64,000 nucleotides of DNA. Source: Ministeria vibrans ATCC 50519 (lineage: Eukaryota > Protista > Filasterea). Shown here one piece after another: positions 42,240-45,200 of the stretch. The translations under genes and the position numbers were made by a program. Every line of letters starts with the position of its first letter. Positions within the stretch are counted from its first letter, which is position 1. The DNA lies in NCBI GenBank assembly GCA_943704425.1, contig CALSCP010000524.1, forward strand, positions 20,562-84,561. Reading direction: 5' to 3'. The notes under the pieces were generated by a model that searched no databases, had not been told where the DNA came from, and saw only the letters and a list, made by a program, of their open reading frames with translations.

Positions 42240-45200
42240 CGAATGCTGTTGAATCGCGTTCGGTTGCTGCGGTCATCTCGCCATGCGCACTCTCGCCTTG
42301 CTCTCGAGGCTCCTGCACCAACGTGTGGCGATCGGGACTTCAAGTGTTCCGTTGCGACTGTCCCTCCGGATGGTCTGGCGATCGCTGCGATGTGCAAAAC
42401 ATGTGCAACCCTTGGTCGTGTCTCAACGGTGGCACCTGTTCGCAGCCGCCCACGACCTCGAAGCCTGCGGACGTCGTTCTCATGCTCGACAACTCGTATT
42501 CGATTATCGACGATGTCGTGCAGCTCAAAACGGCCGCCATCCTCTTTGTCGAGCAGCTGCGCGCAACCGACCGCGTTGCTGTCTACACATACAAGACAAC
42601 CTCGCGCCTGCTGCCCCGCCAGACGTCCATTCCCCACCGCGCCACGTCGTTTGCCTTCATGACCGCGGCGGGCAAGGAGACCCTCATCAACCACATTCGC
42701 AACACGGCCTTCCAGTCCTTCTCCTCGTACACGCCTCTCTGGGACACGACAAGTGACTCGATCCAGTATGCCATGGCGAACGGTCGTGCGGACGCCTACA
42801 AGGCCATTGTAGGCATCACGGACGGTGCCGACACCTCCTCTGCCTTTAACTTTTACCGCAACAACGACGCCAACGAGTTCCCCGATGGAGATGCGCTCGG
42901 TCGCACCGGTGCCAACGACAACAACGTGCGTGACGACTATGGCAGCGCCTATGTCGGCGCCGACATGATCGACGGTGGTGTCTGCAAGGCTCCTCTGCCC
43001 ATTTTCATGATCGGCCTCGACGTGACCGCGACCACCGGAAACCAACTGCGCGAGGTGGCGCTTACCTCCAACGGCGCCTACTATGCCTCACCCAATACCC
43101 TTCAGCTCGCCTCCATCTACATGGCCATCAGCCAAAATGTTGTCCATTCCACTGTGTGTACTTGTCCCGCCGGCTACACCGGCGCCCGTTGCGAGACCGA
43201 CATCAACGAGTGTGCCTCAAGTCCCTGCCAAAATGGCGGTACTTGCCTCAACGAAGCCGGAAGCTACTGGTGCCGTTGCACGTCGGGCTTCACCGGCCCC
43301 ACTTGCAGCACCCCCTCCGACGTGTGTTCGTCGAGCCCTTGCCAGAACGGCGCTTCTTGCGTCCTGGTGCAGCAGCTGCGTGGTCGACGTGACAATGACG
43401 AGGAGGAAGACGAGGAGGCGTACCTTGACGAGGATCAACAAGACGAAGAAGACTTCCTCGATTCCGAGGTTACCCTCGACGGTGATATGGAATTGAGTCG
43501 TGAGGATCGTACTGCGCGTCGCCGTGCCAGCACGCGCCGTCGTAGCACATCCCGTCGTCGTACTACATCCCGTCGTCGCTCCAGCTCTCGTCGTCGCGCC
43601 ACGTCCCGTCGCCGTGCACCTCCTCCTCCTCCTCCTCCACCGCCGCCGCCGCCGTCGAGTCGCCGTCGTTACGTTGCCCGTCGTCGTGCTCCCGTTGCCC
43701 GTCGTCGTGCTCCCGTTGCTCGTCGTCGTGCTCCCGTTGCCCGTCGTCGTGCTCCCGTTGCCCGCCGTCGTGCTCCCGTTGCCCGCCGTCGTGCTCCCGT
43801 CTACCGTCGTCGTGCGCCTGTTGCCCGTCGTCGCGCTCCCGTTGCCCGCCGCCGTGCTCCCGTTGCTCGTCGTCGTGCACCTTGGCCTCCCGTGGTGCGT
43901 CGTCGTGCACCCGTTGCCCGCCGCCGTGCTCCCGTGGTCCGCCGTCGTGCCCCTGTCACTCGCCGCCGTGCTCCCTGGCCTCCTGTGGTGCGTCGCCGCG
44001 CTCCCGTTGCTCGTCGCCGTGCTCCTGTGGCTCGACGCCGCGTTGTCATTGCCCGTCGTCGCGCACCTCCTCCTCCGGTTGCTCGACGACGCAGCCCTCC
44101 CCCAGTCGTGCGCCGCCGTGCGCCTCCGCCACCGTAAGATCTCCAACACAGTTGACTCTTGCAGTTTCTTACTCACCGTCTCTTTACTTGTCTTGTGTGT
44201 AGGCCTGTGTCGCGTCGTCGCTTCGTGTCACGTCGCCGAATGTAAATGAGATGATCCTACAGGAGTTTCCCCTCTGACGCCTACTTGTGTATTTTTAGCA
44301 TCGTTGCCCGCCGTCGTGTTGTTGCCCGTCGTCGTGCTCCTGTCGTCCGTCGTCGTGCTCCCGTTTACCGTCGCCGTGCTCCCGTCGTCCGTCGTCGTGC
44401 TCCCGTCGTCCGTCGTCGTGCTCCCGTCTACCGTCGTCGTGCTCCCGTCACTCGACGTCGCATGTAAGAATTCCACTCCTGTCCTTTTGTCTCGAGTCTC
44501 TTTTTGATTTGTATCATTTTTTTTCTCTTCTAGCGTGATTGCTCGTCGACGAGTTGTGATTGCCCGTCGACGAGTTGTGATTGCTCGTCGCCGCGTTGCT
44601 CCGCCTCCCACAACGTAAGGAAACGCACAACGGTAGATTGTGTGTGTTTACTCACATTTGTCTCCTTCTTTTTTTAGACGCCGTCGCGTCGTGTCTCGTC
44701 GCCGAATTGTTATTGCAAGACGTACGACAAGCACAGTGAACTATTCATGCGACTTACCAATCATTGCATTTGTTGTGTAGGTCGTGTGGTGTCTCGCCGC
44801 CGAACCCCACCTCCGCCTCCCACCACACGCCGCCGCGTCGTTATCGCACGCCGTCGCGTGGTTGTTGCTCGGCGTCGCGTGTAAGAAACATCAATCAAAC
44901 ATTAATGCAATTTACATACACACACCAAAGACACTCGCAAAAGCTCACCCGTGTTTTTTAATTTGCAGGGTTTCTCGTCGACGAATTGTCATCGCACGCC
45001 GGCGCGTTGTCATTGCACGTCGTCGTGTCGTGGTGACACGCCGTCGTGTTGTCGTGGCCAGACGCCGCGTTGTTATCAGCCGTCGTCGTACGATTCCTCC
45101 TCCCGTCTACATGTGTGTGTGCGCTGCCGGTTTCACCGGTCCCTTCTGCGAGACGAACATCAACGAGTGTGCCTCGAGCCCATGCCGCAACGGCGGAACC

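What the first reader, a model, noticed from the sequence alone, without database searches (positions are those of the whole stretch)
43320..45150. Acidic spacer plus ~50 RRR-peptide repeats nested within one EGF domain: candidate peptide-precursor or polycation display system
Seen: [12 protein letters not shown], then LRGRR, a ~40 aa D/E-rich spacer, RTARRR, ~50 units of RRR+APVA/APVY/APWPPVV/VVIA/STS, and finally [14 protein letters not shown]. The insert lies between EGF Cys3 and Cys4. Known: RxRR/RxxR and multibasic sites are furin/kexin targets; acidic pro-piece plus cationic repeats is the layout of multi-peptide antimicrobial and neuropeptide precursors; EGF disulfides pair 1-3, 2-4, 5-6. 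Inference: excision would release a Pro/Arg polycation or many short peptides while the Cys2-Cys4 bond keeps the vWA head tethered. Left uncut, it could bind bacteria, anionic surfaces or silica.
Basis: partly seen in the sequence, partly recalled or inferred. Interest (0 to 1): 0.85.

Follow-up and report, generated by a model that had tools for sequence, protein, structure and literature searches.

The report
Arginine-repeat loop nested in EGF domain
A giant cell-surface protein of a marine protist carries, looped out of one EGF domain, an acidic stretch followed by 53 "three arginines plus about four residues" repeats. The block is transcribed, spliced in frame and conserved in a related species and in three other genes, but whether it is cut into peptides or displayed as a sticky positive tail has not been tested.

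Summary
Between Cys3 (43358-43360) and Cys4 (45114-45116) of one EGF module lies a 447-residue insert. It reads [10 protein letters not shown], then a 39-residue acidic piece (22 D/E), then RTARRR and 53 RRR triplets. It has 164 Arg, no Lys and never four Arg in a row.

RNA contigs, including a polyA RNA-seq run, run unbroken from the EGF half into the array. They start or stop exactly at four of my predicted exon edges, while DNA contigs run through the introns. So transcripts keep the block.

A relative in a metagenome contig (about 56-64% identical) has the same nested layout with 20 RRR units. Three other genes of this genome carry RRR arrays: an EGF receptor, an ephrin-receptor-like receptor and a 226-residue secreted protein. 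Differences between units are mostly synonymous.

The genome encodes two kexin/furin-type convertases. However, the canonical furin motif occurs only once, and no cleavage data exist.

My best reading is a masked polycation displayed at the tip of the receptor. Release as peptides is a live rival, and silica precipitation is unsupported. Other notes of this scan flagged further extracellular Arg tracts elsewhere in this genome.

The parts
42239..44133 (+). Exon that carries EGF1, EGF2 with a nested vWA, EGF3, EGF4, the N-half of the split EGF, the acidic piece and the first 34 RRR units. A 5' exon with the signal peptide was not located.
   Evidence: RNA contigs of X1, X5 and X6 all begin this exon at 42239, with 164, 0 and 99 further upstream letters. 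X1 record 1 runs unbroken over 42239-43708, and X1 record 2 covers 43771-44133 and then continues 145 letters beyond the exon end. Pfam finds EGF and VWA.
42404..43192 (+). EGF module with a vWA domain (MIDAS-like DNSYS at 42488-42502) nested in the same Cys3-Cys4 loop.
   Evidence: The sequence reads [12 protein letters not shown] ... vWA ... [13 protein letters not shown]. Pfam VWA matches residues 78-201 of the exon. The arrangement is conserved in L015.
43325..43360 (+). N-half of the split EGF module (Cys1-Cys3: [12 protein letters not shown]).
   Evidence: It is nearly identical in ortholog L015 ([12 protein letters not shown]).
43361..43390 (+). Entry linker [13 protein letters not shown] and GRR are conserved in the ortholog. 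RGRR is the only canonical furin motif.
43391..43507 (+). Acidic piece of 39 residues with 22 D/E.
   Evidence: The ortholog has a longer acidic piece (its whole insert holds 37 D/E), likewise bracketed by GRR and R..RRR.
43508..43660 (+). RTARRR, five Ser/Thr-spaced RRR units and a Pro12 tract.
   Evidence: The same order (S/T units, then polyPro) is found in L015.
43661..44133 (+). Main 21-nt array, with RRR + APVA, APVY, APVV, APWPPVV, VVIA and similar spacers.
   Evidence: TRF period 21, score 330-345; unit table; third-position bias of the differences between units.
44134..44202 (+). Intron 1 (69 nt, GTAAGA..TAG, phase 2).
   Evidence: The RNA contig stops matching at 44133, while DNA contig X16 record 11 runs through 43771-44403.
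44203..44241 (+). Exon of 39 nt: (P)[12 protein letters not shown].
44242..44298 (+). Intron 2 (57 nt, GTAAAT..TAG, phase 2).
   Evidence: X6 record 28 starts matching at 44299, preceded by 21 unlaid letters.
44299..44463 (+). Exon of 165 nt with 8 RRR units (APVV, APVY, APVT).
44464..44533 (+). Intron 3 (70 nt, GTAAGA..TAG, phase 2).
   Evidence: DNA contig X16 record 12 runs through 44399-45844.
44534..44614 (+). Exon of 81 nt: [27 protein letters not shown].
44615..44677 (+). Intron 4 (63 nt, GTAAGG..TAG, phase 2).
44678..44721 (+). Exon of 44 nt: [15 protein letters not shown].
44722..44780 (+). Intron 5 (59 nt, GTACGA..TAG, phase 1).
44781..44880 (+). Exon of 100 nt: [33 protein letters not shown].
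44881..44968 (+). Intron 6 (88 nt, GTAAGA..CAG, phase 2).
   Evidence: RNA contigs of X1, X5 and X6 all start matching at 44969, with 290, 8 and 200 upstream letters. The 290 letters equal exons of 100+44+81 nt plus 65 nt.
44969..45107 (+). Last Val/Ile-spaced RRR units and the exit linker TIPPPV.
45108..45149 (+). C-half of the split EGF module ([14 protein letters not shown], Cys4-Cys6).
   Evidence: L015 has [14 protein letters not shown].
45150..54523 (+). Rest of the gene: about 50 EGF modules, a vWD domain, more EGFs, a TM helix (54266-54328) and a short tail. An N-run at 52763-52767 shifts the frame in the assembly.
   Evidence: Pfam; translation with TM and stop; N runs.

Best explanation
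Shown. The block is a real, expressed, selectively maintained protein segment. It consists of an acidic piece followed by an (RRR + 3-4 residues)n array, looped out between Cys3 and Cys4 of the fifth EGF module. It lies near the membrane-distal tip of a giant type I surface protein of about 4,000 residues, whose head also carries a vWA domain nested in another EGF. The same RRR module recurs in three other secretory proteins of this genome and in the orthologue of a related species.

Inferred. The array works as a displayed polycation, an unfolded, Pro-rich, roughly +140 tail that binds polyanions such as bacterial surfaces, sulfated or phosphorylated glycans, or the cell's own coat. The acidic piece acts as a built-in counter-charge during biosynthesis. 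It is bracketed by conserved basic sites (GRR upstream, R..RRR downstream), so a kexin/furin-type convertase may excise it. That would unmask the array, which stays on the receptor, while the Cys2-Cys4 disulfide of the EGF keeps the vWA head attached.

I put the 'real coding, conserved module' part at 0.9 or more. The display mechanism as a whole I put at about 0.4.
For: Transcription and splicing:
- RNA contigs from three studies, including one polyA RNA-seq run, cover 42239-43708 without a break. They start or stop at 44133, 44299 and 44969, exactly where I predicted exon edges. DNA contigs run through the introns.
- The spliced frame is open, and all exon phases are compatible.

Conservation:
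- Orthologue L015 has the same EGF split and the same order: GRR, acidic piece, Ser/Thr-spaced RRR units, polyPro, Pro/Ala units, Val/Ile units, PPP-x-YMCVC.
- In the repeat, 90 of 123 aligned residues are identical although 51 of those codons differ. The EGF flank gives 38 of 53 identical with 18 codons differing.
- Within the array, codon differences from the consensus are 37 synonymous against 9 non-synonymous. By codon position the counts are 5/7/39. An unfiltered 21-nt run gives 3/3/11.
- APVARRR is kept in three genes with different Ala codons.
- There are exactly three Arg in all 53+20 clusters, no RRRR and no Lys.

The module elsewhere, always in a secretory context and mostly near the N-terminal tip:
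- C2357: EGF1, a short acidic piece, the array, EGFs, TM.
- C141: signal peptide, an acidic piece, the array, ephrin-receptor-like repeats.
- C2427: signal peptide, a linker, 22 RRR units, stop.

Context:
- The TM helix and tail place the block outside the cell.
- Convertases are present in the genome.
- Against wholesale cutting, only one canonical furin motif is present, and many units have Val/Ile right after RRR.
Against: - There are no protein-level data of any kind. Binding partners, cleavage and localisation are all untested.
- The acidic piece (-22) cannot neutralise about +160, so 'charge masking' is at best partial.
- Tribasic sites are good kexin-type sites, so the array itself could be cut.
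- Alignment within repeats is not strictly orthologous column by column, so the codon statistics are indicative only.
- The 5' exon with the signal peptide was not found in the window. Secretion is inferred from the orthologue's signal peptide, the domain types and the C-terminal TM.
Confidence: 0.4

Rival explanations
1. Multi-site convertase substrate. Kexin-type enzymes cut after every RRR, and basic-residue trimming releases many short peptides (APVA, APVY, VVIA...) or larger Pro/Arg fragments with signalling or antimicrobial activity. The two receptor halves stay linked by the EGF Cys2-Cys4 bond.
For: - One peptide unit (APVARRR) is repeated many times and kept across three genes despite synonymous divergence. 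That is the pattern of multi-copy peptide precursors.
- The clusters are strictly tribasic.
- Two S8+P-domain convertases are encoded in the genome.
- An acidic piece followed by basic repeats is also the layout of Sil1p (PMC4557024) and of insect PrAMP pre-pro-polyproteins (PMC11549390 abstract).
- A stand-alone secreted RRR-repeat protein exists.
Against: - The furin P4 Arg is missing in all 53 units.
- The products after trimming would be only 3-4 residues long, with no Gly for amidation.
- Spacers drift from Ser/Thr to Pro/Ala to Val/Ile along the array in both species. That fits a polymer with a gradient better than a set of identical products.
- Embedding a precursor in an EGF loop of a 4,000-residue receptor would be unprecedented.
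- There are no peptide data.
Confidence: 0.25
2. Tolerated low-complexity loop. A slippage-prone 21-nt minisatellite expanded in a permissive EGF hairpin. It persists as a disordered spacer or bristle with no specific ligand and no processing.
For: - Copy number differs strongly between species (53 against 20 units) and between paralogues.
- Each array has its own codon flavour, which points to concerted evolution.
- There is no Pfam family and no true relative among 1.84 billion representative proteins.
Against: - The frame, the RRR triplet, the order of the sub-blocks and the flanking basic sites are kept between orthologues that are only about 56-64% identical and half-diverged at synonymous sites.
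- Differences between units are biased to third codon positions.
- The same peptide unit is found in four different protein contexts.
Confidence: 0.2
3. Silica or mineral-precipitating polycation of the silaffin type.
For: Only the layout matches Sil1p: an acidic domain followed by basic repeats (PMC4557024).
Against: - The insert has zero Lys, no Ser-Lys clusters and no RXL motif.
- Nothing seen here links the organism to silicification. Its best named HSP90 matches are animals, and other agents' notes call it a filasterean-type protist.
Confidence: 0.03
4. Not coding. The whole block would be one large intron, a misassembly, or an ORF on the opposite strand.
For: - Read straight through, the block contains stops.
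- The antisense strand also reads RRR-rich ORFs.
Against: - RNA contigs run from the EGF half straight into the array, and the six small introns are removed at GT..AG sites on the + strand.
- DNA contigs of an independent run match the assembly with no differences.
- The orthologue has an uninterrupted frame across its insert.
- The antisense RRR reading is a mirror effect of CGN repeats.
Confidence: 0.02

Closest known systems
Diatom silaffin precursor Sil1p (Cylindrotheca fusiformis)
   Same: It has a signal peptide, an acidic N-terminal domain of unknown function, and then a strongly basic, highly repetitive part that is processed at basic motifs (PMC4557024).
   Different: - Sil1p is Lys/Ser-based with RRIL/RRNL (RXL) ends, and it is a small stand-alone protein.
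- Here there is no Lys and no RXL. The units are 6-7 residues long, and the module is nested in an EGF of a giant receptor.
- There is no sequence homology.
Pro/Arg-rich antimicrobial peptide polyprotein precursors (insect apidaecin-type pre-pro-polyproteins; mammalian Bac5/Bac7/PR-39)
   Same: These are secreted precursors with a pro-region and tandem Pro/Arg-rich units. The insect ones are described as pre-pro-polyproteins (PMC11549390 abstract). That the units are released at basic sites, and the Bac5/Bac7/PR-39 comparison, rest on my own knowledge.
   Different: - The known mature peptides are about 18-60 residues long with PRP-type motifs.
- Here the units are 6-7 residues with strict RRR, and the carrier is a membrane receptor.
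- No activity has been shown.
Fish protamines (salmine, clupeine)
   Same: They have Arg clusters separated by short Ser/Thr/Pro/Val/Ala spacers and no Lys. The first units here ([24 protein letters not shown]) look protamine-like. This comparison rests on my own knowledge.
   Different: - Protamines are nuclear DNA-packing proteins of about 30 residues with clusters of 4-6 Arg.
- Here the array is about 400 residues long, extracellular, and has exactly three Arg per cluster.
Domains nested inside other adhesion domains (laminin/perlecan domain IV inside a laminin-type EGF module; integrin alpha-I vWA inside the beta-propeller)
   Same: A whole segment is looped out of a small disulfide-bonded or repeat module without destroying it. 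The same protein here also nests a vWA in an EGF Cys3-Cys4 loop. This comparison rests on my own knowledge; the paper I opened did not show the passage.
   Different: - The known inserts are folded globular domains.
- Here the insert is a low-complexity polycation with an acidic leader, sitting in a classical hEGF module.

Membership tests
EGF-like domain (PF00008), split module | Six Cys with hEGF spacing: C-x4-C-x5-C, then Y-x-C-x-C-x8-C. | tested here: met
   The two halves read [12 protein letters not shown] ... [14 protein letters not shown]. They match the neighbouring modules, which Pfam scores as EGF. The halves are conserved in L015.
EGF-like domain (PF00008), split module | The two halves fold together, with 1-3, 2-4 and 5-6 disulfides. 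| tested here: inconclusive
   A single-sequence AlphaFold2 run on L015:1092-2330 gave mean pLDDT 44 and pTM 0.20, which is not usable.
Proprotein-convertase (kexin/furin) multi-peptide precursor | The protein passes through the secretory pathway. | tested here: met
   The orthologue has a signal peptide. The domains are EGF, vWA and vWD. A C-terminal TM follows at 54266-54328. The window's own 5' exon was not located.
Proprotein-convertase (kexin/furin) multi-peptide precursor | Repeated peptides are flanked by multibasic sites. | tested here: met
   There are 53 RRR triplets separating spacers of 3-8 residues.
Proprotein-convertase (kexin/furin) multi-peptide precursor | The canonical furin motif R-X-[KR]-R is present at the sites. 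| tested here: not met
   Only one match (RGRR) occurs in the window insert and none in the orthologue insert. The sites are di- or tribasic of the kexin type only.
Proprotein-convertase (kexin/furin) multi-peptide precursor | The processing enzyme is encoded in the genome. | tested here: met
   Two loci carry Peptidase_S8 plus the P_proprotein domain, on C2383 and C257.
Proprotein-convertase (kexin/furin) multi-peptide precursor | Cleaved products exist. | not testable with these tools
   This needs peptidomics, N-terminomics or westerns.
Silaffin-type biosilica proteins | Lys clusters or Ser-Lys-rich units, and RXL processing motifs. | tested here: not met
   The 447-residue insert has 0 Lys and 0 RXL. 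The features are defined per PMC4557024.
Silaffin-type biosilica proteins | An acidic domain followed by a basic repetitive part. | tested here: met
   A 39-residue acidic piece is followed by the RRR array. This is a match of layout only.
Protamine / protamine-like | A nuclear, DNA-condensing small protein. | tested here: not met
   The segment lies between the two halves of an EGF module in the ectodomain of a type I membrane protein.

The most novel reading that the evidence does not exclude
A lineage-specific, portable 'masked polycation' module in a unicellular marine protist, possibly a close relative of animals. The module is an acidic leader plus an (RRR-x4)n array, and it has been placed at the tips of several unrelated giant surface receptors and in a small secreted protein. 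A kexin-type convertase removes the leader. That unmasks a tentacle of about 400 residues made only of arginine clusters. In this gene the tentacle stays tethered through the split EGF's disulfide, and the cell uses it to capture bacteria or to bind its own anionic coat.
Probability: 0.2. Interest if true: 0.8.

Novelty: new variant of a known kind. Interest (0 to 1): 0.6.

Why it matters
If the array is functional, it is a new kind of extracellular adhesion or processing element. It is a very long, arginine-only polycation with strict RRR periodicity, encoded inside an EGF module and reused across several receptor families of one protist lineage.

It would show that small disulfide modules such as EGF can host very large disordered loops as well as folded domains; a vWA sits in the same loop type of the same protein. 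It would also give a testable handle on how a bacterivorous protist's surface receptors grip anionic targets, or on how convertase processing is used outside animals and fungi.

It is also a clean case of a minisatellite-encoded peptide under purifying selection. All six visible introns of a 12-kb gene sit in the array.

Tried and rejected
- One large intron. Rejected, because RNA contigs run from EGF Cys3 into the array.
- Antisense ORF 43217-44176. Rejected as a mirror effect of CGN repeats; the splice sites define the + strand.
- Word-indexed protein search with the insert. It returned only one weak bacterial low-complexity hit.
- Full HMMER scan of 1.84 billion representatives. It gave 460 hits, none at 1e-30 or better. 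The ten I inspected are unrelated heptad repeats (SPISRAK, ERRAPSA, QAPILTN, EEEAPVA, RRRLPFN...), and no listed best match starts before query residue 51, so the first 24 of the 39 acidic residues (query 9-47) are never covered. I take them as not homologous.
- ESM Atlas with the stand-alone RRR protein. It gave only 0.77 'extensin/gp1-like', below any useful level.
- First metagenome scan with the vWA/EGF alignment. It found no relative.
- Second metagenome scan. It returned 80 generic EGF loci, none with an RRR array.
- Whole-genome DNA pattern for CGN triplet arrays. It was uninformative as a count (217 matches against 247 in the control), but it pointed to locus C141.
- C1278 hit. It turned out to be an unrelated AVAERDT coiled coil.
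- AlphaFold2 on the orthologue's split EGF. The confidence was too low to use.
- Intron duplication with the repeats. The six introns are only 33-61% alike, so there is no sign of recent common origin.
- Organism identification through HSP90. The best named matches are animals at 71-74% and unnamed environmental sequences at 95%, so no name was obtained.
- Joined (spliced) model. No search or fold was run on it. It was used only inside a script for frame bookkeeping and counting. All searches used single exons or natural uninterrupted loci, by reference.
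Full report
**What is in the sequence.** On the + strand, the frame of ORF 42230-44137 reads a run of EGF modules. The second module has a vWA domain nested in it. The run then continues as follows:
- [12 protein letters not shown] (43325-43360)
- [10 protein letters not shown]
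- a 39-residue acidic piece with 22 D/E (43391-43507)
- RTARRR
- five Ser/Thr-spaced RRR units
- a Pro12 tract
- a long 21-nt tandem array that encodes RRR plus APVA-type spacers

Tandem Repeats Finder scores the arrays up to 345. The block ends with ...RRRTIPPPV followed by [14 protein letters not shown] (45108-45149). That is the Cys4-Cys6 half of an EGF module with the same spacing as its neighbours. The insert lies between Cys3 and Cys4.

Read straight through, the block has stops. They fall in six short, AT-richer stretches with GTAAG-type starts and pyrimidine-rich ..TAG/CAG ends. These are 44134-44202, 44242-44298, 44464-44533, 44615-44677, 44722-44780 and 44881-44968, each 57-88 nt long.

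Once they are removed, every exon joins in a compatible phase and the frame is open from Cys3 to Cys4. The insert is then 447 residues long. It has 53 RRR triplets, 164 Arg, no Lys, 61 Pro and 22 Asp/Glu, and never four Arg in a row. I used the joined reading only inside a script, for frame bookkeeping and counting. I ran no search or fold on a joined model. All searches used single exons or naturally uninterrupted loci, by reference.

**Is it transcribed and kept?** I laid contigs of four public runs on 41800-47700. The RNA contigs came from three studies, one of them an explicit polyA RNA-seq library labelled marine metagenome.
- All three RNA runs begin an exon exactly at 42239.
- One RNA contig runs without a gap from 42239 to 43708. 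It therefore passes through the EGF N-half and the acidic piece into the array.
- Another RNA contig matches 43771-44133 and then carries 145 more letters that do not continue into 44134.
- Another starts matching at 44299 after 21 unlaid letters.
- Contigs of all three RNA runs start matching at 44969, with 290, 200 and 8 letters upstream. The 290 letters equal exons of 100+44+81 nt plus 65 nt. That reaches back to 44399, which is exactly where the DNA contigs also break in the repeat.
- The run that behaves as DNA has contigs going straight through the introns (43771-44403 and 44399-45844) with no differences from the window.

It is not met. Contigs cannot exclude minor isoforms, and no single contig spans the whole array, because the repeats break the assemblies.

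**Context.** Downstream, Pfam finds about 50 more EGF modules and a vWD domain. After a 5-N assembly gap at 52763-52767, the gene continues to a TM helix (54266-54328), a short tail and a stop at 54523. This is a type I membrane protein, and the block is in its ectodomain, about 430 residues from the mature N-terminus.

The 5' exon with the signal peptide was not found in the laid stretch. In the polyA run nothing was laid between 41800 and about 42190, so its 99 upstream letters do not lie there. The DNA contigs break at a poly-T tract around 42117-42168.

The head module nests a vWA domain, with a DxSxS MIDAS-like motif, in the Cys3-Cys4 loop of EGF2. The protein therefore uses the same loop type twice as an insertion site.

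**Relatives.** A JGI metagenome contig (L015) encodes an orthologue. It is 56% identical over the vWA region and 64% over the alignment that spans the EGF modules and the repeat. Its layout is:
- a signal peptide
- the same EGF and vWA head
- [19 protein letters not shown]
- a longer acidic piece
- RGERRGPRRR
- six Ser/Thr-spaced RRR units
- Pro16
- Pro/Ala-spaced units, then Val/Ile-spaced units
- [23 protein letters not shown]

It has 20 RRR triplets, again never RRRR, and one uninterrupted frame across the insert. The order of sub-blocks and the basic sites that bracket the acidic piece are conserved. Copy number is not.

**The module elsewhere in the genome.** The genome is 29.7 Mb in 2,860 contigs. 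The RRR module recurs in three other genes:
- C2357: signal-like N-terminus, EGF1, a short acidic piece, an array of more than 40 RRR triplets, about 25 EGFs, TM and tail. Here the array lies between modules, not inside one.
- C141: signal peptide, an acidic piece, an RRR/RRRRR array, ephrin-receptor-like Cys-rich repeats.
- C2427: a 226-residue protein with a signal peptide, a Pro/Thr linker, 22 RRR units and a stop. It has 68 Arg, no Lys and one acidic residue.

None of 80 generic EGF loci pulled from metagenomes has such an array. Neither the word-indexed search nor the full HMMER scan of 1.84 billion representatives found a credible homologue. Notes by other readers and agents of this scan list further extracellular Arg tracts in other pieces of the same genome. 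I treat those as leads only.

**Selection.**
- Between the orthologues, 90 of 123 aligned repeat positions keep the residue, although 51 of those use a different codon. That is as conserved as the flanking EGF, where 38 of 53 are identical with 18 codons differing.
- Within the window's array, APVx-RRR units differ from their consensus by 37 synonymous and 9 non-synonymous codon changes. The counts by codon position are 5/7/39.
- A strictly periodic slice taken without any translation filter gives 3/3/11.
- The unit APVARRR is written with different Ala codons in the three genes.

Repeat alignments are not strictly orthologous, and two of the counts select units by their translation, so these figures are indicative. 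All of them point to constraint on the peptide, especially on the exact RRR triplet.

**How it may work.** Canonical EGF pairing (1-3, 2-4, 5-6) means that a cut inside the loop would leave the two chains joined through Cys2-Cys4. That is established knowledge, and its application here is inference. The genome encodes two subtilases with a proprotein-convertase P domain, so dibasic processing is possible. But the furin consensus R-X-[KR]-R occurs only once, at RGRR at the entry to the acidic piece, and not at all in the orthologue's insert. Many units also have Val or Ile directly after RRR.

I favour a masked-polycation display model. The acidic piece accompanies the array during biosynthesis and may be excised at its conserved flanking basic sites. 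The array stays on the receptor tip next to the MIDAS vWA and binds polyanionic targets. The recurrence of 'acidic piece, then array' at the N-terminal tips of other receptors fits this. I rate the mechanism at about 0.4.

The rivals are:
- Multi-copy precursor, 0.25. It is supported by the conserved unit and the stand-alone secreted protein. It is weakened by the tiny products and by the spacer gradient along the array.
- Tolerated low-complexity loop, 0.2.
- Silaffin-like mineralisation, 0.03. Lys and RXL are both absent.
- Non-coding artefact, 0.02.

**Comparison with known systems.** The layout resembles Sil1p, which has an acidic domain followed by basic repeats processed at basic motifs (PMC4557024). 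It also resembles Pro/Arg-rich antimicrobial polyprotein precursors (PMC11549390 abstract). The composition resembles fish protamines (my own knowledge). Nesting resembles laminin domain IV in a laminin-type EGF module and integrin I domains (my own knowledge). The block is not a member of any of these. There is no homology, and defining features of each were tested and not met, as listed in the membership table.

**Organism.** No name was obtained. The runs are marine. The best named HSP90 matches are animals at 71-74% identity. Another agent's note calls the genome a marine protist of filasterean type. I did not test that.

**Verdict.** The block is a real, expressed, conserved and unusual feature. 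The function is unknown in the strict sense. I class it as a new variant of a known kind, with interest 0.6.

Noticed in passing
window 41860-42238: Two exons of an RRM-type gene (NRVFVGGISWK | ADEIGLRDFFSAFGTVTDCKIIMDRETFQSKG) end at a GTAAGA donor at 42079. A poly-T tract follows at about 42137-42160, and the acceptor of the EGF gene is at 42238. DNA contigs break at 42117 and 42168. The RNA contigs that start the EGF exon at 42239 carry 99-164 upstream letters, and in the polyA run nothing was laid between 41800 and about 42190. The true 5' exon (signal peptide) is therefore elsewhere, or the assembly has a gap here.
   Followed up: partly
window 42404-43192: A vWA domain with a DxSxS (DNSYS) MIDAS-like motif and a TDGAD motif is nested between Cys3 and Cys4 of the second EGF module. 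This is conserved in orthologue L015. It is the same loop type that hosts the Arg array three modules later.
   Followed up: partly
window 52763-52767: A 5-N assembly gap shifts the reading frame, so the long ORF seems to end at 52970. The gene in fact continues in another frame through more EGFs to a TM helix (54266-54328) and a stop at 54523.
   Followed up: yes
L015 1086-1088: The orthologous metagenome contig has an in-frame TAG (..KHMF*CVC..) where the window has Val. It may be a sequencing error, a polymorphism or a pseudogene copy. The contig has no introns in its RRR array, so it may be cDNA-derived or an intron-less gene.
   Followed up: no
window 44134-44968: All six introns visible in this 12-kb gene lie inside the Arg array. 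Five of the six are phase 2, and the exons of 39, 165 and 81 nt are symmetric cassettes. The introns are not similar to each other (33-61%).
   Followed up: partly
window 43217-44176 (- strand); also L013 5570-6820 (+) and L014 7958-8662 (+): The strand opposite each array also gives long ORFs rich in RRR ([10 protein letters not shown]...). The reverse complement of CGN-CGN-CGN again contains CGN codons, so this is a mirror artefact that gene callers can mistake for genes.
   Followed up: yes
G000:C2383 (L017 91-2421) and G000:C257 (L016): Two kexin/furin-type proprotein convertase genes (Peptidase_S8 plus P_proprotein domain).
   Followed up: partly
window 21868-25002: A 1,045-residue ORF with five copies of the 'Helicase associated' HA domain (PF03457). 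ORF 11866-16368 (- strand) is an NPHP3_N/TANC1-like NTPase with ankyrin repeats.
   Followed up: no
G000:C1278 (L104, about 2300-3000): A long coiled-coil protein with about 40 tandem AVAERDT heptads. It is unrelated to the Arg arrays and was picked up only by its periodicity.
   Followed up: yes
proteins P0252, P0243, P0267: Public predicted proteins of unknown origin with arrays such as (RRRLPFN)n and (ERRAPSA)n. They share heptad periodicity and basic clusters, but no flanking similarity, and may be mis-called ORFs in repeats.
   Followed up: no
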